DNA of 38,488 bases, filler included, from Heptranchias perlo (Eukaryota): NCBI RefSeq assembly GCF_035084215.1. It is 2 parts of 2 records of this genome, joined end to end, with 100 filler letters (N's around TTAATTAATTAA, not from the genome) between each part and the next. Parts side by side here need not be neighbours in the genome. Positions count along the whole stretch, not along the records: positions 1 to 15,286 come from NW_027139272.1; 1 more part is not named here. One strand, written 5' to 3'. The notes beneath the pieces were generated by a model. The model was not told where the DNA came from and made no database searches. It saw only the letters and a program-made list of their open reading frames with translations. Below are positions 1 through 15,286 of the stretch, piece by piece; position 1 is the stretch's first letter, and each line of letters opens with the position of its first letter. Position numbers and translations under genes: made by a program.

Positions 1-462
1 CAGTACTGAGGGAGTGCTGCACTGTCGGCGGGGCAGTACTGAGGGAGTGATGCATTGTCGGAGAGGCAGTACTGAGGGAGTGATGCATTGTCGGAGAGGC
101 AGTACTGAGGGAGTGATGCATTGTCGGAGAGGCAGTACTGAGGGAGTGCTGCACTGTCGGCGGGGCAGTAGTGAGGGAGCGCTGCACTGTCGGAGAGGCA
201 GTACTGAGGGAGTGCTGCACTGTCGGAGAGGCAGTACTGAGGGAGTGCTGCATTGTCGGAGGGGCAGTACTGAGGGAGTGATGCATTGTCGGAGGGGCAG
301 TACTGAGGGAGTGATGCATTGTCGGAGAGGCAGTACTGAGGGAGTGATGCACTGTCGGAGGGGCAGTACTGAGGGAGTGATGCATTGTCGGAGGGGCAGT
401 ACTGAGGGAGTGATGCATTGTCGGAGGGGCAGTACTGAGGGAGTGCTGCACTGTCGGAGATG
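1..462 (+). repeat. 33-bp minisatellite (CAGTACTGAGGGAGTG(C/A)TGCA(C/T)TGTCGGAG(A/G)GG), about 14 copies, truncated by the window start
   Basis: Tandem unit is directly visible; the ORF 14..514 repeats an 11-aa unit (HCRRGSTEGVM). The last unit runs directly into SINE body sequence. Confidence 0.95.
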
Positions 463-740
463 CCGTCCTTCAGATGAGACGTTAAATCGAGGCCCCGTCT
501 TCCTGTTCAAATGAACATAAAAAGAACCAATTGCTCCCATTTCTCCCTCAATCCACACCAATAAAAACAGATGAACAAATCAATCATCTCATTGCCATTT
601 GCTGTGCAGAAAATGTCTGCCATGTTACTCCCAGATAGTGCCAATGACCAGGTCATCCCAAGTCATTTAATGGGTGTAAAGTGGTTCGGGACATTTCTCC
701 GAGACAGGATAAGGCTCTATATGGATACAAATCCTTTCCT
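430..740 (+). mobile_element. Deu-domain SINE (SacSINE1/AmnSINE-like), central and 3' part, decayed
   Basis: GTGCTGCACTGTCGGAGATGCCGTCCTTCAGATGAGACGTTAAATCGAGGCCCCGTCT..., then GCTGTGCAGAAAATGTCTGCC and an L2-like tail (GGCTCTATATGGATACAAATCCTTTC). Resembles the shark Deu-SINE as I recall it; related copies lie at about 8885-9035 and 9970-10075 on the minus strand. Confidence 0.7.
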
Positions 741-782
741 CCTGTCAGTCGATAGCTGCACCGGCTCTGTGAGGATACTCAC

Positions 783-1043
783 TCGAGGCACCGTGTTGCT
801 GTCGGTAAAATATCTCGGCGTTTCCTCTGACCAGACCATGGAACCCCGCCATTGTGATGGCGATGGCGTCCCAGTGATGGTTGTCGAAGGAGTCGGCCAT
901 CCACTGCTGTCTGGGCACAGTCCGCTGCAGGGTGCTGTCGAAATACACTATCTCATAGTCATCGAGCATCGCGACCAAGCTGTACTCGGGCATCTCGGCC
1001 CCGCCACGGCTCAGTATGTAGTAAAATGCGAGGATGTGGAAAT
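783..1043 (-). CDS. MHC class I-like heavy chain, alpha-1 domain exon (non-classical)
   Basis: Acceptor TTTCTGTCTGTGATCCTGCAG|AT at 1044/1043 and donor TCGA|GTGAGT at 783/782; 261 nt (87 codons), phase 1 at both ends, no stops. Translation (x)FHILAFYYILSRGGAEMPEYSLVAMLDDYEIVYFDSTLQRTVPRQQWMADSFDNHHWDAIAITMAGFHGLVRGNAEIFYRQQHGAS shows class I alpha-1 hallmarks: H3, PE(F/Y)xxV, D29-D30, FDS, PRxxW(M/I), W60. Confidence 0.92.
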
Positions 1044-1133
1044 CTGCAGGATCACAGACAGAAACCAGTCTCAAAAATGACGTTAATCATAAGTAACTCA
1101 AAGTGGAAACGGCTAATGCTCAGCCTGGTTAGA

Positions 1134-1948
1134 CCATAAGACCATAAGAGATAGCAGCAGGAGTAGGCCATTCAGCCCCTCGAGCCTGCTCCGCCATTCA
1201 ATGAGATCATGGCTGATCTGATTTTTACCTCAACTCCACTTTCACGCCCTTTCCCCATATCGTTTGACTCCCTTGCTGATCAAAAATTTGTCTAACTCAG
1301 CCTTGAATGTATTCAATGACTCCACAGCTTTTTGGGATAAAGAATTCCAAAGATTCACAACCCTCTGGGAGAAGAAATTCCTCCTCATTTCCGTCTTAAA
1401 CGGGCGACCCCTTATTCTGAGACTATGCCCCCTAGTTTTAGATTCCCCCATGAGGGGTAACGTCCTCTCAGCATCTACCCTATCGAGTCCCCTCAGAATC
1501 TTGTATTTTTCATAAGATCTCCTCTCATTCTTCAAAACTCCAATGAGTATAGACCCAACCTGTTCAATCTTTCCTCATAAGACAACCCTTCCATGCCCGG
1601 AATCAACCTCGTGAACCTTCTCTGAACTGCCTCCAATGCAAGTATGTCCTTCCTTAAATAAGGTCACCAGAACTGTACGCAGTGCTCCAGGTGTGGTCTC
1701 ACCAGCACCCTGTACAGTTGTAGCATGACTTCCCTGCTTTTATACTCCATCCCCCTGGAAATAAAGGCCAATACTCCGTTTGCCTTCCGGATTACCTGCT
1801 GCACCTGTATGTTGACTTTTTGTGTTTCATGTAGGAGGACACCCAGATCCCTCTGTACCGCAGCATTTTGTAGTATTTCTCCATTCAAATAATATTTTGC
1901 TTTTTTATTTTTCCTCCCAAAGTGGATGACTTCACATTTTCCCATATT
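1134..1948 (-). mobile_element. CR1 LINE, 5'-truncated 3' end (RT C-terminus and 3' UTR)
   Basis: Minus-strand ORFs contain KCEVIHFGRKN, RDLGV, LYRVLVRPHLEHCVQFW, TRGHSLRI, RRNFFSQRVVNLWNSL; short tandem tail (CCATAAGA)2 at 1134-1149. Confidence 0.93.
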
Positions 1949-2069
1949 AGGCCACAGTGAGGACGTTGCGTCCGATTTTGGATACCATGTGTTGAAGAGG
2001 ATGTCAAGCTCACGGAGAAGGTCGGGAAGAGATTTGCTCGGGCGATCCCAGGGAATCTGGTGGACAGCT

Positions 2070-2700
2070 ACAAAAATGGAATGGCGAATGGAACGTTGGC
2101 CTTTATCTCGGGGGCTGGAATACAAAGGGGAGGAAGTTATGTTCCAGCTGTTCGGAGCTCTGGTCAGACCACATCTGGAGATACTGTGTTCAGTTCTGGG
2201 AACCGCACCTCAGGAAGGATAGATTGGCCTTGGAGATTTAGCAGAATGATACTGGGGCTTAGAGGGTTAAATTATGAGGACAGGTTGCATCGACGAGGCT
2301 TGTATTCCCTTGAGTGTAGAAGATTAAGGGGTGATCCAATTGAGGTGTTGGAGATGATTAAAGGATTTGATAGGGGAGATAGAGAGAAACTATTTCCTCT
2401 GGTGGGGGGAGTCCGGAACAAGGGGGCGTAACCTTAAAATTAGAGCTCGGCCGTTCAGGGGTGATGTCAGGAAACTCTTCCACACACAAAGGGGAGTGGA
2501 AATCTGGAACTCTCTCCCCCAAAAAGCTGTTGAGGCTGGGGGTCAATTGAAAATTTCAAAACTGAGATTGATGGATTTCTGTCAGGTAAGGGTATTAAGG
2601 GATACGGAATCAAGGCTGGTAGATGGAGTTAAGATATGCATCAAGCCATGATGTAATTGAATGGCAGAACAGGCTCGAGGGGCTGAATGGCCTCCTCCTA
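2070..2700 (+). mobile_element. CR1 LINE 3' fragment (frameshifted)
   Basis: SRGLEYKGEEVMFQLFGALVRPHLE, GLNYEDRLHRRGLYSLECRRLRGD, TRGRNLKIRARPFRGDVRK; 3' UTR AGGCTCGAGGGGCTGAATGGCCTCCTCCT. Confidence 0.92.
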
Positions 2701-2768
2701 CACCGAGGTTCCGATGAGAGGCTTGAGTTATGAGAACAGACTGGGATTCTTTTCACTGGTACAGAGAT

Positions 2769-3430
2769 AAGAACATAAGAAACAGGAACAGGAGTAGGCC
2801 ATCCGGCCCCTCGAGCCTGCTCCACCATTCAACAAGATCATGGCTGATCTCCTACCTCAACGCCATTTTCCTGCACTATCCCCATATCCCTTGATGCCTT
2901 TAATATCTGGAAATCTATCGATCTCTGTTTTGAATGCACTCAATGACTGAGCCTCCACAGCCCTCTGGGGTAGAGAATTCCAAAGATTCACCACCCTCTG
3001 AGTGAAGAAATTTCTCCTCATCTCAGTCCTAAATGACCTACCCCTTATTCTGAGACTGTGACCCCTGGTCCTAGACGCCCCAGCCAAGGGAAACATCCTC
3101 CCTGCGTCTGCCCTGTCGAGCCCTGTAAGAATTTTGTATGTTTCAATGAGATCACCTCTCATTCTTCTAAACTCTAGAGAATACAGGCCGTGTCGACTCA
3201 ATCTCTCCTCATACGACAATCCCGCCATCCCAGGAATCAGTCTGGTGAACCTTCGTTGCACTCCCTCTACGGCAAGTATATCCTTTCTTGGGTAAGGAGA
3301 CCAAAACTGCACACAATACTCCAGGTGTGGTCTCACCAAGGCCCTGTATAATTGCAGTAAGACATCTTTACTCCTGCACTCAAATCCTCTTGTAATAAAG
3401 GCCGACATACCATTTGCCTTCCTAATTGCT
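2769..3430 (-). mobile_element. CR1 LINE 3' fragment with an open RT C-terminal frame (2857-3408)
   Basis: LYRALVRPHLEYCVQFWSPY, VQRRFTRLIPG, RMRGDLIETYKIL, TRGHSLRI; CR1 3' UTR at 2769-2850. Confidence 0.94.
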
Positions 3431-3609
3431 AATGGTCAAGGGGATCTGATAGAGGGGTCCAAACTATCAGGGGTTTGGTAAAATAAAGAGAATAAACACT
3501 TTCCGTTGGTCAGTAAGTCGGAAACTAGAGGGCATAAATTTAAGGTCAAGAGCAAAGGGAGAGATTAGAGGGAATTTTGTTAATGGAGAGGGATGTTCGG
3601 AGACGGAGG

Positions 3610-3775
3610 CTGGGATTTCCTGCTTCAATGCTCCAAGCGGACACCACTAGCCCACGTTGGAAAATTCCTCAGCCGTGATTCTCCCACCATTCATTTTACT
3701 AGCTAGAAGCTCAGAGCTTGGTGAAGTGGCAGCTTCCGTTAGGAGCTCCCAGGAGTTCTGGAGCAGGAAATCATT
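3610..3775. mobile_element. Small MITE-like non-autonomous element with imperfect terminal inverted repeats
   Basis: GATTTCCTGCTTCAATGCTCC (3614-3634) vs GGAGTTCTGGAGCAGGAAATC (3752-3772): 17 of 21 positions complementary. It interrupts the old CR1 fragment. Confidence 0.5.
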
Positions 3776-4974
3776 GGTCAGACTGCCCGACCAGTGGGGG
3801 GAACAGGTCCCACAATAGCTGCTCAAAGGAAAGTGGATAAATATTTTTTTTAATTTTTCTTTTTAAAAGAGTCTGGGCAAAGGTCAGAAGAAAGTGGGTA
3901 GCGCTTTCAGAGAGCCAGCATAGCATGATGGGCCAAATGGCCTTCTTCTGTGCTGTACAATGTTATGTTCCTACGATTCCTACTGTTAACAAGATGGCTC
4001 CTGGGCTGGCTGCTCCCTCGGGAGCTCCTTTGCTGGACAATCCTATCCTTGGTCATCCATTGCCATCCTTTGCCCTTTCTCCCCCAATCTCCTCTCTTCC
4101 ACTGGTTAAGTTCCCTGGCTCTAATAGTGGGTGCATTTTACCCCTACCCACAAGTTCAAGCTGCAAGTTTAAACTTACCTGGGCCCACTGCCCATTCCCC
4201 GACCGGGCCTGCTCTTTGTTTACATCAGAGAAAACTGGATCTTTGCTCAAATTTGGCTTCTAAATTCCTCGACTTCTCAACACTACGCTACTGCACTGGA
4301 AGACTCAGCTGCTTAAGAGTTAAGGTAACTTTGTCCAGCCCACAGCCCATCCCCCAGCTATTACCTGCTGAGTTTATGACTGTACTACTGGTTTATCAGC
4401 TTTATTTTTCTACAGTCTGGTTCCTGGCCAGAAATTCACTCCCCTTGGCCGAAGTCCATTCCTCCGCTGCTTCTAGATCTTACAGTGACCTCCATCTTCA
4501 CCATCGTTCTTCTGCTCTGCGATCGATTCTCCAAACCTCCTGACTCTTCATCCCCACGGAAATCCCCCCCAGCAGTGCGTCCTCCGATAATCTACCCTTC
4601 AAATAGCTTCTGGACTCACTCACCCTCCACACCCTGTCACCGAACCTGGACATCAGTTGGTTGATGCTCCAAGCTGACTCCACCCTATCTACATCAACTT
4701 TATCCCACCACAGGACCTCTGACTTTAACTGTGGACTCCCTCCTATTGTCTCCTCTCTGTTCCCCGTTTAGTAACAGGTCACATGGTTCGCCCTATTTAT
4801 ACCCTGCCCGATTTTACGCTCCATTGAAGCTGAACCAAATCCATCCCATTCCCTCTGGACAGGTTAGGTTAAAATCGAGGCTTTAGCATGAGGAAGATAT
4901 CATCCTGACGTCTGTCCCAAGTCGCCTTTTACTAGTTTGAACCTAAGTCGTACTCCCACAATTTAGTGTGAAGT

Positions 4975-7900
4975 ATTGTAAAAAAAAAACAGATGAGGTC
5001 CTGCAAGCAGAATATTGGGAGATAGGAAATAAATTAAAAAGCAGGACCTCTAAAGTAGTAATCTCAGGATTACTCCCAGTGCCACATGCCAGCGAGAGCA
5101 GAAATAGGAGAATAGACCAGATGAATGCGTGGCTTGAGAGATGGTGTAGGAGGGAGGGGTTTAAATTCCTGAGGCATTGAGACCGATTCTGGGAAAGGCG
5201 GGACCTGTACAAGATGAAAGGATTGCACCCAAGCAGAACCGGGACCAGTATCCTCGTGGGGACATTTGCTAGTTGTGTTGGGGAGGGTTTAAACTAGTAT
5301 GGTGGGGGATGGGAACCAAAGGGCAGGTACAGATAGGACAAATTCAGACCAGGAAACGCAAAGTAGAAAAGCAGTTAGTGACGTAGTTAGCGACTCAGAA
5401 ATGCAAAAAAGCAAAGGTTAAATAGTGTTCAGCGCAGGAATTTGACGGGGTTAAAGGGTATATACTTCAATTCAAGGAGTATTACAAACAAAGCAGATGA
5501 GCTAAGGGCACAGATAGACACGTGGCAGCATGATATCATTGCTATAATGGAAACCTGGCTTAAAGAGGGGGATAACTGGCAGCTCAATATCCCTGGATAT
5601 AGAGTGTTCAAGCAGGATAGAGTGGGTGATATAAAAGGAGGGGGGTAGCATTATTGGTTAAATAATCAATTAGAGTTGTGAGAAGGGATGATGTGCTAAA
5701 TGGATCATCAATCGAGGCCGTATGGGTTGAGCTAAGGAATAAAAAAGGGGCAGTCACACTACTAGGAGTGTACTCTAGACCCCCGAATAGCGAAAGGGAG
5801 ATAGAAGAACAAATATGTAGGCAAATTTCTGAGTGCAAAAATAAGAGGGCAATAATAGTAGGGGACTTCAACCACCCTAACATCAACTGGGATTCAAACA
5901 GTGTGAGGGGCACAGAGGGCGCAAAATTCTTGATTGGTGTCCAGGAGAACTTTTTTAGCCAGTACGTGACAAGCCCAACAAGAGGGGATGCAATTCTAGA
6001 TTTAGTCCTGGGAAATGAAGATGGGCAAGTGGGTGAAGTGACAGTGGGTGACCATAATGGGGATAGTGACCACAATTCAGTTAGTTTTAGCATTATTATG
6101 GAAAGGGACAGTGTTAAATCAGGAGTAAATGTTTTAAATTGGGGGAAGGCAAATTTTACAGAACTTAGAGGTGATTTGGCAGAAGTGGACTGGACACAAC
6201 TCCTTGAGGAGAAATCAGTGGCAAGCCAGTGGGAGGCACTAAAAAGTGAAATTCTACGGGTACAATGCAGACACGTCCCCTCAAAGAAAAAGGGTGGCAC
6301 TGCCAAATTTAGAGCCCCCTGGTTGTCTAGAAGTATACGGGGCAAGATAAAGCAGAAAAAGAAAGCTTATGACTGTCACAGAAAACTAAATACTGCAGAA
6401 AGCCTGGAGGAGTATAGAAAGTACAGGGATGACGTAAAAAAGGAAATAAGGAAAGCAAAGAGCAGGCATGAAGAAATATTAACGAGTAAGATTAAAGAAA
6501 ACCCAAAGATGTTTTATCAGTACATTAAGAACAAGAGGATAGCTGAGGAAAAGGTGGGACCTATCAGGGACGATAAGGGTAACTTGTGTGCAGAAGCAGA
6601 GGATGTGGGTAGGGTTTTAAATGAATATTTTGTCTTCGTATTCATAAGGGAAAGGGATGATCTGGACGTAGTCGTTAAAGAGGAGAGGTGTGAAATATTG
6701 GATAAAATAAACATAACGAGAGAGGAAGTACTAGAGGGACTGGAATCCTTGAAATTTGATAAGTCACCAGGGCTGGATGGATTGTTTCCCAGGCTATTGA
6801 AGGAAGCCAGTGAGGAAATAGCGGATGCTCTGAGGATCATTTTCCAATCCTCACCAGATACAGGGGAGGTACCGGAGGACTGGAAGACTGCAAACATAAT
6901 ACCGTTGTTTAAAAAGGGTACGAGGGAAAGGCCGAACAATTATAGGCCGGTCAGTCTTACCTCGGTGGTGGGCAAACTATTAGAATCAATACTGAGAGAT
7001 AGGATAAACTGTCACTTGGAAAGGCATGGTTTAATCAGGGATAGTCAGCATGGATTTGTTCAGGGAAGGTCATGCCTTACAAATCTGATTAAACTCTTTG
7101 AGGAAGTGACAAGGAGGATTGATGAGAGTGATGTCCACATGGATTTTAGTAAGGCATTTGACAAGGTCCCACATGGCAGACTGGTCAGAAAGGTAAAAGC
7201 CCATGGGATACAGGGAAATGTGGTGAATTGGATCCAAAATTGGCTCAGTAACAGGAAACAAATGGTAAAAGTCGATGGATGTCTTTGAGAATGGAAATCC
7301 GTTTCCAGTGGTGTGCCACAAGGCTCAGTGTTGGGTCCCTTGCTGTTTGTGGTATATATTAATGATTTGGACTTGAATGTAGGGGGCATGATTGGCAAAT
7401 TTATAGACGACAAAAATTGGCCGTGCAGTTGATAGTGAAGAGGATAGCTGCAGACTCCAAGAAGATATCAATGGGTTGGTGGAGTGGGCGGAAAAGTGGC
7501 AAATGGAGTTCAACCTGGAGAAGCGTGAGGTAATGCACTTAGGGAGGGCAAACAGTAAAAGGGAATACGCAGTAAACGGGAATATATTGAGAGAGGTAGA
7601 GGAAGTGAGAGACCTTGGAGTGCATGTGCACAGGTCCCTGAAGGTGGCAGTACAGGTCGATAAGGTTGTGAAGAAGGCATACGGAATGCTCTCCGTTATT
7701 AGCAGAGGCATAGAATAATAAATCAGGGATGTAATGATGGAACTGTATAAAATGCTGGTCAGGCCACAGCTGGAGTATTGTGCGCAGTTCTGGTCACCAC
7801 ATTACAGGAAGGACGTAATTGCTCTGGAGAGAGTGCAGAGAAGATTTACAAGAATGTTGCCAGGGCTTGAAAATTGCAGCTCGGAGGAGAGATTGGATAG

Positions 7901-8325
7901 GCTGGGGTTGTTTTCCTTGGAGCAGAGGAGGCTGAGGGGAGACTTGATTGAGGTGTACAAAATTATGAGGGGCCCAGATAGAGTAGACAGGAAATACCTG
8001 TTTCCCCTAGTGGAGAGTTCAAGAACTAGAGGACATAGCTTTAAGCTGATTGGCGGAAGGATTAGAGGGGACATGAGGAAAAACTCTTTTACCCAGAGGG
8101 CGGTGGGTGTATGGAATTCGCTGCCCGAATTGGTGGTAGAGGCAGGGACCCTCAACTCTGTTAAAAAGTACCTGGACCTGCATCTAAAGTGCTGTAAGCT
8201 GCAGGGCTACGGACCGGGTGCTGGAAGGTGGGACTAGAATGGGCACCTGGTTGTTCTTCGAGCCGGCACGGACACGATGGGCCGAATAGCCCCCTTCTGT
8301 GCTGTATCTTTTCTATGGTTCCATG
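4975..8325 (+). mobile_element. CR1 LINE, long copy: ORF1 esterase C-terminus plus disrupted ORF2 (APE endonuclease and RT)
   Basis: ORF1 end: LKSRTSKVVISGLLPVP...MNAWLERWCRREGFKFL. ORF2: YFNSRSI, ETWL, GVYSRPPN, GDFNHP, PTRGDAILDLVL, SDHNS, NYRPVSLTSVVGK, QHGF, DFSKAFDKVPH, GVPQGSVLGP. Premature stops near 5663, 7288 and 7718 and a frameshift near 7400 in the catalytic (F/Y)ADD region. 3' UTR ends near 8325. Confidence 0.96.
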
Positions 8326-8884
8326 CCGTTAAAACCGGAAGTGGTCGGTTTGAAGGCGGGTTTTAGATTTTTACAATTTTTACCTTCCCACCTGCACCCA
8401 AACCCACCCGTTCATGGGGTTAAAATCGACCCCTTAGAGTTCACCTTGGCCTTGACGTGCTCAGAGACTACAATAAACAGGCAGTGTTTGCCCAGAAATA
8501 AATGTCAGTCATGGACACGGATTAACCAGGAGAGAAGCTGCTGTAACAGTAACTTAATCTCTTGCGCTTTTCAACACCACTCGAGTCTGAAGCTACTTAT
8601 TGGTGCTTGTGTGCAGCAGGTCTGATAACCAGATCCAGTTAGAATGGAGGGACTTGTTCTGATCACTGGGTCCCAGGGAGTGGAGTCTGAGCCTGCATCT
8701 TACAGCAGGGGTTCACACTGAGGCCCAGCCCAGTATTAACACCAAACCATTGCATCTGGTTACACCCCCTGTATTTCAATGGTCTATTCCAGACTCCCAC
8801 TTTCACCCCTCCCATTCTCTTCCCAATGCACCGACTCTCACTGGCAATGGGACCACAAAGAAAAGAGAGACTCACATTCCTATT

Positions 8885-9035
8885 GTGATTTCACCACCTC
8901 AGGACCTCCCAAAGAGTTTTACAGACAGTGAAGTATTAGTGAAGTGTAGTCACTGTTTTAATGTAGGAAACACGGCAGCCAATTTGCGCACAGCAAGATC
9001 CCACCAATAGCAACGAGTTAATGGCCAGATAATCT
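8885..9035 (-). mobile_element. Deu-domain SINE 3' fragment
   Basis: ACCTCAGGACCTCCCAAAGAGTTTTACAG...GAAGTGTAGTCACTGTTTTAATGTAGGAAACACGGCAGCCAATTTGCGCACAGCAAGATCCCAC, the reverse complement of the Deu-SINE 3' region. Confidence 0.75.
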
Positions 9036-9478
9036 CCCGACTCGCTCTCCCTCCCCGTCCCCTCCTCCTCCTCTCCCTCCCACCATCCCTCTCTCCCTGT
9101 CCCACCCTCTCACTCCCATCTCCCTCTCCCTCCCCCTCCTCATCTCCCTTCTTGTCCTCTTCCACTCCCCATCTCCTTTCCCTTCCTCTCCCTCTCTTCA
9201 TCCAATTCCCCCCTCCCTCCTCATATCCCCTCCTTCCCCCTCTCCCTGCACAATTCTACCCAATCCTCCACCTCTCTTTCTCCTTCTCCATCCCCGTCCC
9301 CTCTCCCTCCCCATCCCTTTCCCTCCCATCTCCCTACCCCTCACTATCTCCCACTCCCATCTCCTCCCCCTCCCTCTCTCCATCTCCCTCCCCCTCTCCT
9401 TCTCCCTCCCGCTCTCCCACATCGTATCCCTCTGCCTCCCCCATGCTCTCCCCCTTCCCCTTTCCCCCTCCCCCTCAG
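9036..9478. repeat. Polypyrimidine (C/T-rich) low-complexity tract
   Basis: About 440 nt, almost entirely C/T on the plus strand. Confidence 0.9.
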
Positions 9479-9969
9479 TTTGAGCATGACGTCCACTGAC
9501 TGGATTTGGTGACATTGTTCAATGCTCTGTTATCCTCATGGATTGCTGTTCTGAGGAGCCTCATGTTAAGCGCGACTCGAAGACGGTGCATTGAAAATTA
9601 ACATAAAAATCTGTCTGTGAATTTGCTTCGATGCCAATTTATTCTAATTCACCCAGATCAACATCACTGTGAGTATTTTTGCCTCGAGCACCAGTTGATT
9701 ATTGAAGAGTCAGCAGCTCATTCTCCCCACAATCGGACACACAGAGTTCACTTTGGCCTTGACCCGCTCAGAGACTATAATAAACGGGCAGTGTTTGCTC
9801 AGAAATAAAAGTCAGTCGTGGGCCTGAGCAACACATCGGACATCGGACAGTCCAAAGTCCATTGTGTTGCTGTGAGGTGAAGGTGGGAACGGGGGGGCAG
9901 GCTTCGAATCTGCTTCGATTTCAGTGTCACCCTGCTGAAGCAGCACAAGAAGGTTCGGAAAGAACAAAA

Positions 9970-10075
9970 GATCTTTTTATACATCACCTTTCACAACCTC
10001 AGGATGTCCCAAAGCGCTTCACAGAAAGTGAAGTAATGTGAAAGTGTCATCACTGTTGTAATGTCGGAAACGCCA
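9970..10075 (-). mobile_element. Deu-domain SINE 3' fragment
   Basis: CACCTTTCACAACCTCAGGATGTCCCAAAGCGCTTCACAG...CACTGTTGTAATGTCGGAAACG; homologous to 8885-8975. Confidence 0.7.
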
Positions 10076-10094
10076 TTCATTATGAGAAGTACTT

Positions 10095-10543
10095 TCATAC
10101 CGGGGGCTGAAAGGGTTGAATTATGAGGACAGGTTGCACAGACTAGGCTTGTATTCCCTTGAGTGCAGAAGATTAACGGGTGCTGTAATTAAGATCATTG
10201 AAGGATTTGATATTGTAGATAGAGAGAAACTATTTCCTCCGGTGGGAGAATCCAGAACAAGGGGGCGTCACCTTAAAATTAGAGCCAGGCCGTTCAGGGG
10301 TGATGTCAGGAAGCGTTTCTTCACACAAAGGGGAGTGGAAACCTGTAACTCTCTCCCCCAAAAAACTGTTGAGGCTGGGGGTCAATTGAAAATTTCACAA
10401 CTGAGATTGATCGATTTTTGTTCGGCAAGGTTATTAAGGGATATGGCACCAAGGATGGAGTTGAGATGCAGATTGGCCATGATCTAATTGAATGGCGGAA
10501 CAGGATCGAGGGGCTGAATGGCCTCCTCCTGTTCCTATGTTCC
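10095..10543 (+). mobile_element. CR1 LINE 3' fragment (same subfamily as 2070-2700)
   Basis: NYEDRLHRLGLYSLECRRL, TRGRHLKIRARPFRGDVRKRFFTQRGVE; 3' UTR GGGGCTGAATGGCCTCCTCCTGTTCCTATGTT. Confidence 0.92.
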
Positions 10544-10737
10544 AATGTGATGTTTTGACTGTGTACAGCAACTTACAATAAAACAGTGTACAGGGAGACA
10601 CCTCAGAGCACAGAGCAGGAGGAAGGAGACCAAAGAGAGGATTTAAGGGGAGCCAGAATCACGGACAGAAGGGGATTCAGGAACTGTGTGGAGACAGGAA
10701 GGAAGAAGACAGGAATCCTGAGGGAGACTGCTGGAGA

Positions 10738-11040
10738 ACCAGAGAGGTTTAGGGACGGAATTCCAGAGCTTAACGCCGAGGCAGCTGAAGGCACGGCCGC
10801 CAATGGTGGAGCGATTAAAATCGGGGCTGCGCTAGAGGCCAGAATTGGAGGAGCGCAGAGATCTCGGAGGGTTGTAGGGCTGGAGGAGGTTACAGGGATA
10901 GGGAGGGCGAGACCATGGGGGGATTTAAAACAAGGATGAGAATTTTAAAATCGAGGCGTTCCCGGACCGGGGGCCAGTGTAGGTCAGCGAACGCAGGGGG
11001 TGATGGGAGAACGGGACTTGGTGCGAGTTAGAATACGGAT
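10738..11040 (-). mobile_element. L2-clade LINE fragment
   Basis: Reverse-complement homolog of 11645-11925 (for example GCAGCTGAAGGCACGGCCGCCAATGGTGGAG vs CTCCACCATTGGCGGCCGTGCCTTCAGCTGC). Confidence 0.85.
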
Positions 11041-11565
11041 TTCAAGCACTGAATCGAAAGCAAATTCTCGACACTCCTTCCCTCACCAACTCCCTTCTCT
11101 CCTCCTCCTCCTCTCTTGAATCCATTAACCTCTTGCTGGATAGGGTTCCACAGACAGGGGTCACTCTCCAGTATATCGCCCCAGTGACCATTAAACACCT
11201 GTGAGCCTTGACACTAAGCATCAATAGGCTTTTCAACACAGCCTGGCCAGATCCTGGCCCGTCCGATGTCCAGACACGCACAGTTCCAACACTGTTTGAT
11301 TTAGAGTGGGGATAACAGTCCCCTCCCTAACCCAGGGGCCCTGAGGCCACATGTCGCGGCCCTACAACCATCACCCCAGTTGGGATCAGTTTAAAGTGGC
11401 TTTTAACCACCCAGCACAGAGAGTGTCTAAAACAGTGACTGGTGACCCTCTGTGCACAGTCTCTTTGGGTTACAGTCCAGTCTACCTCCAATCCTGAGAC
11501 ACCAGCCGAGTCACCCCACTGGCCACAGGTATTGGAGTATCATTCGATTGCTCAAGCCCACTTAC

Positions 11566-11614
11566 TCTTGCTCAGGCGACTACAAAGTATGACCCAGAAA
11601 CTACCCAATAGCAT
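11566..11614 (-). CDS. Candidate leader (signal peptide) exon of the MHC class I-like gene
   Basis: ATG CTA TTG GGT AGT TTC TGG GTC ATA CTT TGT AGT CGC CTG AGC AAG A|GTAAGT = MLLGSFWVILCSRLSK, 49 nt, phase 1, consensus donor. Same strand as and upstream of the phase-1 alpha-1 exon, in non-repeat sequence. Against: weak Kozak context, Lys at -1, and an L2 fragment only about 30 nt upstream. Confidence 0.33.
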
Positions 11615-11644
11615 CCAGAAAATGTGGTGTTCCCTTCCCTCCCT

Positions 11645-12090
11645 GTCACCCGTTCCCCACCCACCCCGTGCTCGCTGACCTACATTGGCTCCCGATCCGG
11701 GAACACCTCGATTTTAAAATTCCTCCATGTGTTCAAATCCCTCCCTGGTCCCGCCCTTCCCTATCCCTGTGACCTCCTCCAACCCTACAACGCTCCGAGA
11801 TCTCTGCACTCCTCCAATTCTGGCCTCTTGCGCATCCCCAATTTTAATCTCTCCACCATTGGCGGCCGTGCCTTCAGCTGCCTCGGCCCTCAGCTCAGGA
11901 ATTCCCTCCCTGAACCTCTCCGCCTCTCCACCTCTCTCTCCTCCTTTAAGATGCTCTTTCAAACCTACCTCTTTGACCAAGCTTTTGGTCACCTGTCCGA
12001 ACATCTCCTTACGTGGCTCAGTGTCAAGTCTTGTTTGATAATCGCTCCTGTGAAGTGCCTTGGGACGTTAAAGGCGATATATAAATGCAG
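11645..12090 (+). mobile_element. L2-clade LINE 3' end
   Basis: Decayed L2 C-terminus (LADLHWLP-type motif in CTCGCTGACCTACATTGGCTCCC; PRSLHSS; GGRAFSCLGPQLRNSLP; SSFKMLFQTYLF) and tail TGTGAAGTGCCTTGGGACGTTAAAGGCGATATATAAATGCAGGTTGTTG. Confidence 0.88.
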
Positions 12091-12114
12091 GTTGTTGTTG
12101 TTGTTGTTGTTGTT
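12091..12114 (+). repeat. (GTT)8 microsatellite forming the L2 tail
   Basis: gttgttgttgttgttgttgttgtt directly visible. Confidence 0.95.
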
Positions 12115-12803
12115 ACAGCGACGATGAAAGAACAGCGATATATTTCCAAGTCGGGATGGTGTGTGACTTGGAGGGGAACGTGCAGGTGGTGTTGTTCCCA
12201 TGTGCCTGCTGCTCTTGTCCTTCTAGGTGGTAGAGGTCGCGGGTTTGGGAGGTGCTGTCGAAGAAGCCTTGGCGAGTTGCTGCAGTGCATCCTGTGGATG
12301 GTACACACTGCAACCACAGTGCGCCGGTGGTGAAGGGAGTGAATGTTTAGGGTGGTGGATGGGGTGCCAATCAAGCGGGCTGCTTTGTCCTGGATGGTGT
12401 TGAGCTTCTTAAGTGTTGTTGGAGCTGCACTCATGCAGGCAAGTGGAGAGTATTCCATCACACTCCTGACTTGTGTCTTGTAGATGGTGGAAAGGCTTTG
12501 GAGAGTCAGGAGGTGAGTCACTCACCGCAGACTACCCAGCCTCTGACCTGCTCTCATAGCCACAGTATTTATATGGCTGGTCCAGTGAAGTTTCTGGTCA
12601 ATGGCGATCCCCAGGATGTTGATGGTGGGGGATTCGGCGATGGTAATGCCGTTGAATGTCAAGGGGAGGTGGTTAGACTCTCTCTTGTTGGAGATGGTCA
12701 TTGCCTGGCACTTGTCTGGTGCGAATGTTACTTGCCACTTATCAGCCCAAGCCTGGATGTTGTCCAGGTCGAGCTGCACGCGGGCACGGACTGCTTCATT
12801 ATC
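12115..12803 (-). mobile_element. LINE 3' fragment of a second CR1/L2-group family
   Basis: QLDLDNIQAWADKWQVTFAPDKCQAM, ILGIAIDQKLHWTSHI, TIYKTQVRSVMEYSPLACMSA, KKLNTIQDKAARLI, SLHHRR; sequence distinct from the dominant CR1 family. Confidence 0.88.
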
Positions 12804-13809
12804 TGAGGGGACTGAGACTACAAAAACATCACCTGGTGTTTACGATGGTCTCCCACAATATTTCAAGGCCTCCTTATCTCTAGCCTTCCAGGCAGTTCGA
12901 ATAACACTTTTCCAACGTGGCCAACCTGCCCAGCATGCCGCCTTGAACAGTCAGTTCAACAGTTCCGATGTTGAATTAATACTTTTAACCAAACTCAGCT
13001 CCTTTAGCAGGTAATTAATCCTTAAAACTGGTATTTAAAAGTCCAAAATCCTTCACTGTAAAGTGCTTTTGGTCACTTCCACCGGGATCTAGTCCTGATA
13101 CGGACCCTACAGGAGTACTTAGTGTTGGGGGGCACTGGGGAGCGGAACTGAGGGAGTTCTGATGGATGGTGCCATGTTTACAGTCCCATCTCTTCCAATG
13201 ATGTCCGCATGGAGTGGGGGTGGAGGGGGGTGGAAAGGACACAAGAGGTGACCCCTCACACTCTCGGTGAAATTTCCCAACTTTGGGGGAAAAAAGGGAT
13301 GGAGACCTGGAGCAGCCGGGTCCAGTTCCAGAATCCAGCCCCGATTACATTGCCTCTGCCACCACCCCACTCCCCAAAGGAATTTCGGGCCCAGATTTTG
13401 TGAGGAAAGCAGGGACTTGAGAGAGGGAGAGGTTGGGGAGGGTGTCCGCCTGGAGAGAGATGGGGGCAGCGGGGCAGCCAAGGATCGTACAGCATAGGAG
13501 AGCAAACAGAAGCGGGAGCAGTCGGGAAAAATCAAATGAGGAGCAGTGTGAGAGACGGAGAGACCAGTAAAGAATGGGGCCCTGGGGTAGAGGTAGGGAG
13601 CAGCAGCAGAACGGAGGCCTGAAGAGGGAGGGAGTGGCAAGCAGATCATGGGCCTAGGAAGGAGCTTTTAAATTCAAGTGCCAAGCCAGAAGTCTTGCAT
13701 TACAGTCTCGTGCAGAACCTCAGCGTCCGGGCACCGGGCTTTTTTTAATGGATGAAAGAGACCATTTTTATTTTCCCAACAGTATTCTCCATCTAATTAT
13801 GTAGGAAAC

Positions 13810-15286
13810 TAATTCTGAATCAGGGACCATAATTAACAGTAATGAAGAAAATAATGGCACTAAAGAGTGACAAATCCCCAGGACCAGATGGTTTCCATCC
13901 CAGGGTTTTGAAGGAAGTCGGTGAGAACATTCCAGAAGCTCTAACCATAATCTTCCAAAGTTCTCTCGATTCAGGAACCGTTCCTTTAGATTGGAAAATT
14001 GCACACGTCACTCCACAATTTAAGAAAGGTGAGAGAGAGAAACCAGGGAATTATAGACCAGTTAGCCTAACATCTGTTGTTGGGAAATTACTAGAGTCTA
14101 TAATTAAGGATCGAGTGACTGAACACCTCGAGAATTTTCAGCTGATCAGAGAGAGCCATCATGGATTTGTAAAGGGTCATGCCTTGAAGAGGTGACTCAA
14201 GTAATGGATGGGGGAATGTCTATGGATGTTGTTTATATGGACTTCCAGAAGGAAATTGATAAAGTCCCTCATAAGAGAATGTTAGCTAAAGTTGAAGCTC
14301 ATGGAATTGAGGGCAAATTATTGATCTGGTTAGGAAATTGGCTGAGCGGCAGGAGACAGGGAGTAGGGATAATGGGCAGGTACTCAAATAGGCAGGATGT
14401 GACTAGTGGTGTCCCACAGGGATCTGTGTCGGGGCCTCAACTATTCACTGTATTGATGATGACAGAAAGAAAGACAGCATTGTCAGCAGTGCAGATGGAA
14501 GCATAAAATTACAGAGATATTAATAGATTATGTGAATGGGCAAAACTGTGGCAAATGGATTTCAGTGTAGGCAAATGTGAGATCATCCACTTTGGACCTA
14601 AAAAGGAGAGATCAAAGTACTTTCTAAATGGTCAAAAGCTGGAAACAGTGAAGGTCCAAAGAGACTTAAGGGCCCCTGTACATAGATCATTAAAATGTTA
14701 TGGACAGGTGCAGAAAATAATCAAAAAGGCTAATGGGATGCTGGCCTTTATATCTAGAGGACTAGAATACAAGAGGGTAGAAGTTATACAGCTGTACAAA
14801 GCCCTGGTTAGACCACACCTGGAGTACTGTTCTGGGCACCGCACCTTAGGAAGGGAGTACAGTGTAGATTTACGAGAATGATACCTGGGCTCCAAGGGTT
14901 AAATTACGAGGAGTGATTACACAAACTAGAATTGTATTCTGTGGAATTTAGAAGATTAAGGGGTGATTTGATCGAAGTTTTCAAGATATTAAGGGGAACT
15001 GATCGGGTAGATTGAGAGAAACTATTTCCGCTGGTTGGGGAGTCCAGGACAAGGGGACACAGTCTAAAAATTAGAGCCAGGACTTTCAGGAGTGACGCAA
15101 AGGGCGGTAGAAGTTTGGAACTCTCTTCCGCAATCGGCAGTTAATGCTCGCTCCATTGGTTTTAAATCTGAGTTTGATAGATTTGTGGTAACCAAAGATA
15201 TAAAGGGATGTGGGGATAAGGCTGGTGTCTGGAGTCAGCTCACAGATCAGCCAGGATCTCAATGAATGGCAGAACAGGCTTGAGAG
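13810..15286 (+). mobile_element. CR1 LINE RT region, decayed, running to the contig end
   Basis: KSPGPDGFHPRVLKE, NYRPVSLTSVVGKLLESII, DVVYMDFQK, GVPQGSVSGP, LYKALVRPHLEYC; many frameshifts and deletions; 3' UTR just before the gap. Confidence 0.94.

What the first reader, a model, noticed from the sequence alone, without database searches (positions are those of the whole stretch)
783..1043. Divergent non-classical MHC class I alpha-1 domain with a hydrophobic groove and no classical peptide anchors
Seen: an intact exon with canonical splice sites. By hand alignment to HLA-A2 numbering (anchored on H3, D29/D30, FDS 36-38 and W60), the anchors are replaced: Y7->F, Y59->H, Y/R84->Q, E63->I, and the N86 glycosylation sequon is lost (H-G-A). 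Groove-facing positions are mostly apolar: L5, F7, Y9, Y22, L24, A26, I63, M67, F70, L73, V74, I80, F81. Established: classical class I keeps Y7, Y59, R/Y84 and N86, while lipid-binding class I-like proteins such as CD1 have hydrophobic grooves; sharks have several non-classical lineages (UBA to UFA, one described as CD1-like). Inference: this is a non-peptide (possibly lipid) binding class I-like molecule, either a member of a known shark lineage or a new one. I cannot assign the lineage from memory.
Basis: partly seen in the sequence, partly recalled or inferred. Interest (0 to 1): 0.8.

Follow-up and report, generated by a model that had tools for sequence, protein, structure and literature searches.

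The report
Shark non-classical MHC class I exon
This is the alpha-1 exon of an expressed, non-classical MHC class I gene of the sevengill shark, from an unnamed gene lineage that is the sister of the recently crystallised shark "UGA" molecule and probably does not present ordinary peptides.

Summary
Window 783-1043 (minus strand) is an intact phase-1 exon with AG and GTGAGT borders, and it encodes an MHC class I alpha-1 domain. Its 86 residues are identical to five full RefSeq models of Heptranchias perlo, automatically named "MHC class I-related gene protein-like". An RNA-type contig covers exactly this exon and leaves it at both borders, as a spliced transcript would.

The gene belongs to a lineage found in 16 elasmobranch species (11 sharks, 5 batoids). 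In a careful tree this lineage has 100/100 support and is sister (99/94) to UGA (PDB 9CH4; 41% identity). It is not UFA (8GM8; 29%).

Only 2 of 8 classical peptide-end anchors remain. The N86 glycan site is lost in 12 of 12 members. MR1's Lys43 is absent. Groove positions are nearly invariant and include an extra cysteine at floor position 99.

Lipid binding is plausible by kinship with UGA but is not shown. The groove's apolarity (27-28 of 35 positions) is only modestly above classical shark class I (22-24). No paper that I could search names this lineage.

H. perlo carries about 11 near-identical gene models on several scaffolds. The piece holds only this one exon, so I could not show that this particular copy is intact.

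The parts
783..1043 (-). Exon 2 (alpha-1 domain) of a non-classical MHC class I gene. It is 261 nt, phase 1 at both ends, and encodes (D)FHILAFYY...QQHGAS(S).
   Evidence: It is 86/86 identical to P0161 residues 19-104. An RNA-type contig lies on 780-1044 only.
1044..1050 (-). Splice acceptor of intron 1 (cctgcag, with the AG at 1045-1044).
   Evidence: Read directly. The spliced contig ends its match at 1044. The extra base fits the G that must end the leader exon to make the GAT codon.
777..782 (-). Splice donor of intron 2 (gtgagt).
   Evidence: Read directly. The contig match ends at 780. The 3 extra bases fit the next codons (S, V) of P0161.
1..776 (-). Start of intron 2. The alpha-2 and alpha-3 exons lie beyond the piece's left edge. 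Positions 1-459 are a 33-bp tandem array.
   Evidence: tblastn with P0161 finds nothing but the alpha-1 exon; the next best hit has E 2.1. TRF finds 13.9 copies at 94% matches. Run depth is zero at 529-735.
1051..15286 (-). At least 14.2 kb of intron 1 (or upstream DNA), full of LINE fragments in both orientations. No leader exon was found here.
   Evidence: A leader-peptide search by exact word and by tblastn was negative. The ORF at 5678-7288 (+) carries endonuclease and reverse-transcriptase domains, and the ORF at 13842-14195 (+) an RVT_1 fragment.

Best explanation
Window 783-1043 (minus strand) is exon 2 of a transcribed non-classical MHC class I heavy-chain gene of Heptranchias perlo or a very close relative. 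The full protein has a leader, alpha-1, alpha-2, an alpha-3 C1-set Ig domain, a transmembrane helix and a short tail. This is shown for the RefSeq models that carry this exact exon, not for this copy.

The gene belongs to an old lineage with one or two gene models per species outside H. perlo. It is found in both sharks and batoids and is the sister of UGA. It arose by a duplication that predates the shark-batoid split.

Inferred mechanism: the heavy chain pairs with beta-2-microglobulin and forms a groove that cannot clamp peptide ends. The N-terminal anchors Y7, Y59 and Y159 are F, H and L. The C-terminal anchors R/Y84 and T143 are Q and L. The groove lining is almost invariant, strongly apolar and aromatic, and has only two charged positions. 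It therefore most likely holds one conserved non-peptide hydrophobic ligand, with a lipid the leading candidate by kinship with UGA, and displays it to T or NK-type receptors.

My odds: identity of the exon and lineage 0.95; a non-peptide ligand 0.7; specifically a lipid about 0.45. The confidence figure given (0.65) is for the whole statement, including the non-peptide ligand.
For: Exon, frame and splice sites.

Identity to RefSeq models: the exon is identical to P0161 and to 4 further full models (5 of 11 models hold the whole exon). P0161 has Pfam MHC_I (96.6 bits) and C1-set (58.4 bits). Its AF2 model has pLDDT 83.9 and a class I secondary-structure pattern.

Transcription: in run X1 a 1,438-nt contig (depth 31.7) lies on 780-1044 only, with 0 mismatches. 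It has 1,085 and 88 further letters on its two sides. The unique intron bins 529-735 have depth 0 in all 3 runs.

Lineage: orthologues occur in 16 species. In the careful tree of 40 rows, this lineage (12 rows) has 100/100 support, UGA (4 rows) 100/100, and the two together 99/94. The quick tree of 62 rows agrees.

UGA identity: 9ch4 is titled 'shark nonclassical MHC class I, UGA'. It is the best structural match (Z 26.2, 41% identity). P0004 matches 9ch4 at E 1e-138, against 1.8e-70 for P0161. Both kinds occur in Pristiophorus and in Leucoraja.

Groove: 2 of 8 anchors are kept; 16 of the 35 groove positions are invariant in 12 of 12 members (3 more in all 9 members that cover them); 27-28 of 35 are apolar; 2 are charged.

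Literature: UFA and UGA are called CD1-like and are said to bind lipids, on the basis of crystal and mass-spectrometry data cited as a personal communication (passages of PMC12562908; passages of PMC10751288).
Against: Apolarity exceeds that of classical shark class I only modestly (27-28 against 22-24 of 35).

Only 16 of the 35 groove positions match the UGA majority (my count from the table). UGA's ligand therefore need not carry over.

The cytoplasmic tail has no tyrosine, so it has no YXXphi endosomal motif of the CD1 type.

Pfam's CD1-type model MHC_I_3 scores 29.0 bits, below its cut-off of 35.

The claim that UGA binds lipids is a personal communication in a review, not published data.

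For this particular copy, no leader exon lies within 14.2 kb upstream, and the alpha-2 and alpha-3 exons lie outside the piece. The RNA contig cannot be assigned to one of the near-identical copies. The tool only guesses that the runs are RNA.
Confidence: 0.65

Rival explanations
1. The molecule presents a small non-lipid metabolite in an aromatic cradle and works like MR1, as the automatic RefSeq name ('MHC class I-related gene protein-like') suggests.
For: After UGA, human MR1 chains are the next best PDB sequence matches of P0161 (about 1e-52, 33-34% identity). The groove is rich in aromatic residues (F7, Y9, F70, F81, W147, Y155, F156, W167, Y171) and has small floor residues G97 and C99.
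Against: MR1's Schiff-base Lys43 aligns to T in P0161 and to A, I, C or T across the lineage. In the printed alignment, MR1 S24, Y62, W69, R94, I96 and W156 align to L, I, F, G, C and L (the list of MR1 contact residues is recalled). MR1 scores only slightly above classical class I (grass carp 5h5z at 4.3e-50). A 2025 review table lists MR1 as absent from cartilaginous fish. No MR1 sequence was in my tree.
Confidence: 0.15
2. This particular copy is a defective or 5'-truncated member of a recently amplified gene array. The exon is intact, but the gene around it is not functional.
For: H. perlo has 11 distinct near-identical protein models (12 XP accessions) on contigs of 7 different lengths (76-530 kb), with up to 3 on one contig. 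Four of the 11 start at an internal Met inside alpha-1, and one starts further in, so no leader exon was modelled for them. No leader exon lies in the 14.2 kb upstream, which is filled with LINE fragments. The alpha-2 and alpha-3 exons are outside the piece.
Against: The exon has canonical splice sites and no stop. It is identical in protein to the 5 models that hold the whole exon, 4 of them complete from leader to tail. A spliced contig matches it with 0 mismatches and carries 88 further letters on the 5' side of the exon, enough for a leader exon plus UTR. Long introns are usual in large shark genomes (general knowledge).
Confidence: 0.2
3. The molecule carries no ligand at all. It serves as a surface ligand or carrier with a narrowed groove, like HFE, FcRn, ZAG or MIC.
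For: VIA-align gives ZAG (Z 23.6) and HFE (Z 23.5) scores within 1 of classical class I and chicken CD1. The fold alone does not decide the question. Bulky groove residues (F, W, Y, M) could fill the cleft.
Against: Near-invariance of groove-lining positions over the shark-batoid divergence is what a conserved binding site predicts. The closest relative with a structure, UGA, is reported to hold lipid (personal communication).
Confidence: 0.12
4. It is a classical or peptide-presenting class I gene (UAA type, or UDA-like).
For: It has the class I domain order, the C101-C164 disulfide, W147 and Y171.
Against: Only 2 of 8 peptide-end anchors remain, while the UAA-type rows keep Y7, R84, W147, Y159 and Y171 in 3 of 3. 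The N86 sequon is lost in 12 of 12. The H. perlo copies differ at only 2 alpha-1 sites and no alpha-2 site, so there is no groove polymorphism. In the tree the clade lies apart from UAA, which includes Triakis UAA and a 6lup-like row. UDA is recalled to keep 8 of 9 anchors. No UDA sequence was at hand.
Confidence: 0.03

Closest known systems
Shark non-classical MHC class I UGA (PDB 9CH4, released 2026-03-18)
   Same: It is the sister clade (99/94) and the best structural and sequence match (Z 26.2, rmsd 3.5 over 268 residues, 41% identity, E 1.8e-70). The alpha-2-helix side of the groove is shared (M152, Y155, F156, L159, L160, D163, Y171), as are G97, Q or R at position 84 and L159 in place of Y. 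In little skate the two genes sit on one 127-kb contig with adjacent accession numbers.
   Different: It is a paralogue, not an orthologue: true UGA orthologues match 9CH4 at E 1e-138, and both genes coexist in Pristiophorus and Leucoraja. Only 16 of 35 groove positions equal the UGA majority. UGA keeps Y7, Y59 and the N86 sequon, and has charged D/E at positions 63, 67 and 80, where this lineage has I/M, M/V and I. UGA has F at position 99, where this lineage has an invariant C.
Shark non-classical MHC class I UFA (PDB 8GM8, released 2024-11-27), described as CD1-like
   Same: It has the class I fold (Z 20.0 over 253 residues), is non-classical, and is reported to be MHC-linked and lipid-binding.
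   Different: Identity is only 29%. The exon matches it at E 5.4e-10, against 1.2e-22 for UGA. 8gm8 ranks 34th for the skate orthologue and is outside the top 60 for P0161. No UFA sequence was in my tree.
MR1 (mammals)
   Same: It is the next best PDB sequence match after UGA (33-34% identity) and gave the RefSeq name. It is monomorphic, highly conserved and has an aromatic groove.
   Different: There is no Lys43, and the aligned MR1 ligand-contact residues are replaced. Orthology was not tested by a tree.
CD1 (tetrapods)
   Same: It has a hydrophobic groove without peptide anchors. Chicken CD1-1 scores Z 23.9 and human CD1d Z 21.4.
   Different: Identity is 21-27%. Pfam MHC_I_3 is below its cut-off (29.0 against 35). 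The tail has no tyrosine sorting motif. Pocket depth could not be tested.

Membership tests
MHC class I superfamily (heavy chain) | An alpha-1/alpha-2 platform domain followed by a C1-set Ig domain | tested here: met
   P0161 scores PF00129 at 96.6 bits (cut-off 28.3) and PF07654 at 58.4 bits. The exon alone scores 27.0 bits, just under the cut-off. In the fold search, 999 of 999 compared chains have Z >= 8, and class I chains score about 24-26.
MHC class I superfamily (heavy chain) | The alpha-2 disulfide (C101-C164) and the alpha-3 disulfide | tested here: met
   The cysteine columns are conserved in 12 of 12 members (11 of 12 for one alpha-3 column, where one row has a gap).
Classical MHC class Ia (UAA type) | The eight peptide-end anchors Y7, Y59, Y/R84, T143, K146, W147, Y159 and Y171 | tested here: not met
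   They read F, H, Q, L, R, W, L, Y, so 2 of 8 are kept and K146R is conservative. All are invariant in the lineage except W147, which is kept in 9 of 12. The anchor list and numbering are recalled.
Classical MHC class Ia (UAA type) | The N86 glycosylation sequon | tested here: not met
   No N at this column in any of the lineage's rows (H, R, S or Q in the 11 the table lists), and no sequon there in 12 of 12. N is kept in UGA 5/5, UAA type 3/3, the multicopy clade 29/29 and Callorhinchus 3/3. An NST/NTT sequon in an alpha-2 loop is present in 12 of 12 instead.
Classical MHC class Ia (UAA type) | Polymorphism concentrated in the groove | tested here: inconclusive
   The 11 H. perlo models differ at 2 alpha-1 sites and 0 alpha-2 sites. 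These are copies or haplotigs from one assembly, not a population sample.
UGA lineage (9CH4) | Orthology: falls inside the clade of 9CH4-like sequences | tested here: not met
   The two clades are reciprocally monophyletic, each with 100/100 support. Both clades contain a shark and a batoid. Identity to 9CH4 is 41%, while P0004 matches 9CH4 at 1e-138 without gaps. Whether the authors use 'UGA' more broadly I cannot tell.
UFA lineage (8GM8) | Close sequence kinship to 8GM8 | tested here: not met
   Identity is 29% and Z 20.0. 8gm8 matches more weakly than MR1 and classical chains do.
MR1 | Lys43, which forms the Schiff base with the ligand | tested here: not met
   It aligns to T in P0161. The column reads A4, I3, C3, T2 across the lineage.
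MR1 | Phylogenetic grouping with tetrapod MR1 | not tested
   No MR1 sequence was available as a stored protein for the tree.
CD1 | Match to the CD1-type Pfam model (PF16497) above its threshold | tested here: not met
   It scores 29.0 bits against a cut-off of 35.
CD1 | Deep hydrophobic A' and F' pockets that hold acyl chains | not testable with these tools
I have only a count of residue types: 27-28 of 35 apolar.
CD1 | A tyrosine-based endosomal sorting motif in the tail | tested here: not met
   The P0161 tail after the transmembrane helix has no tyrosine. The motif definition is recalled.
UDA lineage (cartilaginous fish) | Keeps 8 of 9 peptide-end anchors (recalled from the abstract of Almeida et al. 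2020; the paper is not held) | tested here: not met
   Only 2 of 8 are kept. No UDA sequence was at hand, so there is no tree test.

The most novel reading that the evidence does not exclude
This would be a third, so far unnamed, lipid- or metabolite-presenting class I lineage of elasmobranchs, beside UFA and UGA. Its hallmark would be an invariant unpaired cysteine at groove-floor position 99 (12 of 12 members; F in UGA, T or Y in UAA type). Together with the loss of the N86 glycan, this could mean that the molecule captures its conserved ligand through the thiol, by a disulfide or a thioether. That chemistry would parallel MR1's Lys43 Schiff base but is not known for any MHC-like molecule.
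Probability: 0.1. Interest if true: 0.8.

Novelty: new member of a known kind. Interest (0 to 1): 0.45.

Why it matters
Sharks and rays are the oldest living vertebrates with an MHC. Two CD1-like lineages, UFA and UGA, have so far been reported there only through deposited structures and personal communications.

A third lineage that is the sister of UGA would show that non-peptide presentation had already diversified by gene duplication before sharks and rays split. This lineage has been conserved at 54-72% identity between sharks and batoids. Its groove is almost invariant, its glycan site has moved, and it has an extra groove cysteine.

It also corrects a misleading automatic name: the gene lacks MR1's defining lysine. 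The apparent amplification to about 11 near-identical copies in the sevengill shark, against one or two models in each other species, would be unusual for such a conserved gene if it is real.

Tried and rejected
1. Word-indexed protein search with the 86-aa exon: no candidate. Only proteins of 47-150 aa were eligible, so this blank says nothing.

2. Paper searches for the PDB codes. '9CH4' gave 18 papers, none of whose titles or abstract starts concern the structure (listing only). '8GM8' gave 0. Searches for UFA/UGA with shark, CD1 and lipid terms found only PMC10751288 and PMC12562908, of which I read passages. I therefore found no primary paper on UFA or UGA and no name for this lineage in the searchable library. 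PMC7002201 and PMC8454915 (Almeida 2020, 2021) are not held; what I say of UDA and UEA is recalled. The supplements of PMC10751288 (gene lists S1-S3) were not opened and may list this gene.

3. Leader exon in the piece: an exact-word search and tblastn with P0161, P0159 and the leader peptide were negative.

4. P0171 (Stegostoma) tested as a possible UGA orthologue: rejected, because it has no specific PDB partner.

5. P0213 tested as a possible UFA: rejected, because it is UAA type (6lup at 2.2e-94).

6. Pocket geometry: no coordinates are available in /data.

7. A tree with CD1, MR1, UFA, UDA, UCA and UBA references was not done, because none of these was available as a stored protein.

8. 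The opposite-strand ORF at 571-1080 (169 aa) is taken as the chance shadow of the exon.

The exon was searched alone, and the full-length proteins used are NCBI's own models as returned by the tools.

Full report
WHAT IS THERE. On the minus strand, window 1043 down to 783 is flanked by ...cctgcag and gtgagt. Of the three frames, only the one starting at 1041 is open. It gives 86 codons, FHILAFYY...QQHGAS, and the other two frames have two stops each. The exon is therefore 261 nt long and phase 1 at both ends, as class I alpha-1 exons are.

The exon alone reaches Pfam MHC_I at E 3.9e-6, with 27.0 bits against a cut-off of 28.3 for a model that spans two domains. It matches 460 PDB sequences at E<=10. 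The best are 9ch4_A (1.2e-22), 8gm8_A (5.4e-10), grass carp 5h5z (1.1e-9) and shark UAA 6lup (3.3e-9). In the 1.84-billion-protein library, 143 proteins match at E<=1e-3, 16 at <=1e-10 and 1 at <=1e-30. That last one is P0001, a little skate protein with 70% identity.

WHOSE GENE. A search with P0001 returned 79 proteins at E<=1e-20 out of 1,544 candidates. [quoted passage not shown] Its residues 19-104 equal the window's exon, 86 of 86. The window therefore comes from H. perlo or a very close relative.

P0161 has a leader, alpha-1, alpha-2, a C1-set alpha-3, a transmembrane helix and a short tail. Pfam gives MHC_I 96.6 bits and C1-set 58.4 bits. The AF2 model has pLDDT 83.9 and pTM 0.71, with the usual strand and helix pattern.

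Within the piece only this exon is found. tblastn with P0161 gives the exon at E 4e-56, and the next best hit has E 2.1. The leader peptide is not encoded anywhere in 1044-15286. The alpha-2 and alpha-3 exons must lie left of position 1. Positions 1-459 are a 33-bp tandem array inside intron 2. The 14.2 kb on the 5' side of the exon are LINE debris in both orientations.

EXPRESSION. One sample (three runs that the tool guesses to be RNA) was laid on 460-2500. In run X1 a 1,438-nt contig (depth 31.7) lies on 780-1044 only, at its own positions 1086-1350, with no mismatch and no gap. It runs on for 1,085 letters on one side and 88 on the other, and these do not lie on the adjacent genomic sequence. 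The unique intron bins 529-735 have depth 0 in all three runs.

The one and three extra matching bases at the two borders are what the leader's last G and the next codons (S, V) of P0161 predict. The 88 and 1,085 letters fit 52 nt of leader coding sequence plus UTR, and 740 nt of remaining coding sequence plus 3' UTR. I could not see the contig's letters, so this fit is arithmetic only. This is the picture of a spliced mRNA. X2 and X3 show no such contig. Because the H. perlo copies are nearly identical, the transcript cannot be assigned to this copy.

WHICH LINEAGE. The fold searches supply the entry titles. 9CH4 is 'Crystal structure of shark nonclassical MHC CLASS I, UGA' (released 2026-03-18). 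8GM8 is '... UFA' (released 2024-11-27). The P0161 model aligns best to 9CH4 (Z 26.2, rmsd 3.5, 268 residues, 41% identity). It aligns to 8GM8 at Z 20.0 and 29% identity. Classical chains, MR1, chicken CD1-1, ZAG and HFE all lie at Z 23-25.

True UGA orthologues exist. P0004 (Pristiophorus) matches 9CH4 at E 1e-138 without gaps, against 1.8e-70 for P0161 and 4.2e-66 for the Hemiscyllium orthologue P0164. Pristiophorus has both P0004 and P0159. Little skate has both P0150/P0010 and P0001, and P0150 and P0001 share one 127-kb contig with adjacent accession numbers.

A careful IQ-TREE analysis (40 rows, 344 columns) gives the following. The window's lineage (12 rows: 8 sharks and 4 batoids) has 100/100 support. 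UGA (4 rows: one shark and skates) has 100/100. The two together have 99/94. A Callorhinchus trio is next at 94/91. UAA (including Triakis UAA, named, and a 6lup-like row) has 100/99 and groups with bony-fish class I. A shark-only multicopy clade has 100/100. The quick tree of 62 rows agrees.

Rows left out of the careful tree were the redundant members of the multicopy clade (20 of its 29 rows), P0149 and P0097. Inside the lineage the branching follows the species tree: batoids against sharks, Heptranchias with Pristiophorus, and the orectolobiforms together. This fits an old gene that stays single or low in copy number.

With the cluster look-ups, the lineage is seen in 16 species, 11 sharks and 5 batoids. 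In 7 species its contig has the same length as the contig that carries other class I genes. I take these to be the same chromosome-scale scaffold. That would be consistent with the report that all elasmobranch class Ib genes are MHC-linked (PMC10751288, passages).

No UFA, UDA, UCA, UBA, CD1 or MR1 sequence was in the tree. UFA is excluded by the PDB comparisons only. UDA is excluded only by a recalled criterion.

THE GROOVE. I aligned 52 shark, ray and chimaera sequences and read 35 pocket positions. The HLA-A2 pocket list and numbering are recalled. I mapped them by hand and checked the mapping against the UAA-type rows, which show Y7, R84, W147, Y159 and Y171 in 3 of 3.

In the window's lineage the eight peptide-end anchors read F7, H59, Q84, L143, R146, W147, L159 and Y171. 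Only 2 of 8 are kept. H59, Q84, L143, R146, L159 and Y171 are each present in 12 of 12 members.

The N86 sequon is gone in 12 of 12, while every other group keeps it. An NST/NTT sequon in an alpha-2 loop is present in 12 of 12 instead.

Sixteen of the 35 positions are invariant in 12 of 12 members, and F7, L5 and Y9 in all 9 rows that cover them.

Apolar residues number 27-28 of 35 in the nine full-length members. UGA has 23-27, UAA type 22-24 and the multicopy clade 16-26. Charged residues number 2 of 35, against 5-9 in UAA type. The groove is thus more apolar than in the other groups, but not by much.

Against UGA, 16 of 35 positions agree with the UGA majority, mostly on the alpha-2 helix. 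On the alpha-1 helix UGA has D/E at positions 63, 67 and 80, where this lineage has I/M, M/V and I.

One feature is unique. A cysteine at floor position 99, two residues before the disulfide cysteine, is present in 12 of 12 members (F in UGA 5/5). It has no conserved partner. A further cysteine near the end of the alpha-2 helix occurs in only 8 of 12 members and is absent in H. perlo. The position lies in a confidently modelled strand (residues 107-118, pLDDT block 96).

WHAT IT IS NOT. It does not qualify as MR1. Lys43 aligns to T (to A, I, C or T across the lineage), and the aligned MR1 residues S24, Y62, W69, R94, I96 and W156 are L, I, F, G, C and L. MR1's sequence score is barely above that of classical class I. 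A review table lists MR1 as absent from cartilaginous fish.

It does not meet the CD1 features that I could test. PF16497 is below its threshold, identity is 21-27%, and the tail has no tyrosine motif.

It is not classical, given the anchors, the lost N86 and the lack of groove variation among copies.

COPIES IN H. PERLO. The 90% cluster of P0161 holds 11 distinct proteins (12 XP accessions) on contigs of seven different lengths between 76 and 530 kb. Two of these contigs carry three each. Five of the 11 contain the whole exon unchanged. Four start at an internal Met within alpha-1 and are identical over what they cover. One has G85S. One starts later and has A76T. There is no difference in alpha-2.

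Every other species shows one or two models. This is either a recent tandem amplification or redundant unplaced scaffolds. It also means that intactness is shown for the gene family, not for the copy in this window.

MECHANISM AND ODDS. Shown: the exon, its splicing, its lineage, and the loss of the peptide clamps. Inferred: the protein pairs with beta-2-microglobulin and holds one conserved hydrophobic non-peptide ligand. A lipid is the leading candidate, because its sister UGA and the more distant UFA are said to bind CD1d-type lipids. That statement is a personal communication in the review PMC12562908, and UFA is called 'CD1-like, unpublished' in PMC10751288.

My odds are: non-peptide ligand 0.7; lipid about 0.45; small metabolite about 0.15; no ligand about 0.12; peptide about 0.03.

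NOVELTY. The gene models are in RefSeq under an automatic and misleading name. I found no paper that names or describes this lineage. The laboratory that described UFA and UGA may well know it, or may count it under 'UGA' ('single- or low-copy'). I rate it a new member of a known kind, with moderate interest. The invariant groove cysteine and the moved glycan site are the points most worth following up.

Two key papers are not held. Supplements were not seen. The runs are only guessed to be RNA, and they are contigs rather than reads.

Noticed in passing
window 1-459: A 33-bp tandem array (13.9 copies, 94% matches) runs off the left edge of the piece, inside intron 2 of the class I gene. On the + strand it reads through as an open frame of repeated 'HCRRGSTEGV' units (ORF 14-514), which I take to be an artefact of the repeat.
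   Followed up: partly
window 1150-1218: A short repeat just upstream of the exon has very high summed contig depth in all three runs (about 720,000-850,000), with many contigs and inverted-looking joints (1188 to 1158). It is probably an abundant transcribed SINE- or LINE-end-type element of this genome.
   Followed up: no
window 5678-7288 (+), 13842-14506 (+): The first is a LINE ORF with endonuclease (PF14529, PF03372) and reverse-transcriptase (PF00078) domains. The second is an RT fragment. At least seven further ORFs in both orientations (1242-1535, 1664-2125, 2060-2651, 2857-3408, 7734-8237, 10116-10487, 14555-14881) share a motif of the type 'LVRPHLEYC.QFW...RR.RGDLIE'. The four such ORFs I scanned had no Pfam hit.
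   Followed up: partly
window 9041-9476: A C/T-rich low-complexity tract (several overlapping TRF periods of 6-54; GC skew about -0.5).
   Followed up: no
H. perlo proteins P0161 and P0254-P0263 (not in the window): There are eleven near-identical gene models of this lineage (12 XP accessions) on contigs of seven different lengths, with up to three on one contig. Other species show one or two. This is either a recent amplification or assembly redundancy.
   Followed up: partly
Shark-only multicopy class I clade (29 rows, e.g. P0171, P0174): This clade lacks both cysteines of the alpha-2 disulfide (V/I at position 101 in 28 of 29 rows; L, F or Y at position 164). It keeps N86 and has W at positions 97, 152 and 156. 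It may be the multicopy UEA lineage of the literature (recalled, not checked).
   Followed up: no
Callorhinchus milii proteins P0188, P0197, P0203: This chimaera trio, automatically named MR1-like, ZAG-like or F10-like, sits on a long branch as sister to UGA plus the new lineage (94/91). It may mark the pre-duplication state in holocephalans. The long branch makes its placement uncertain.
   Followed up: partly
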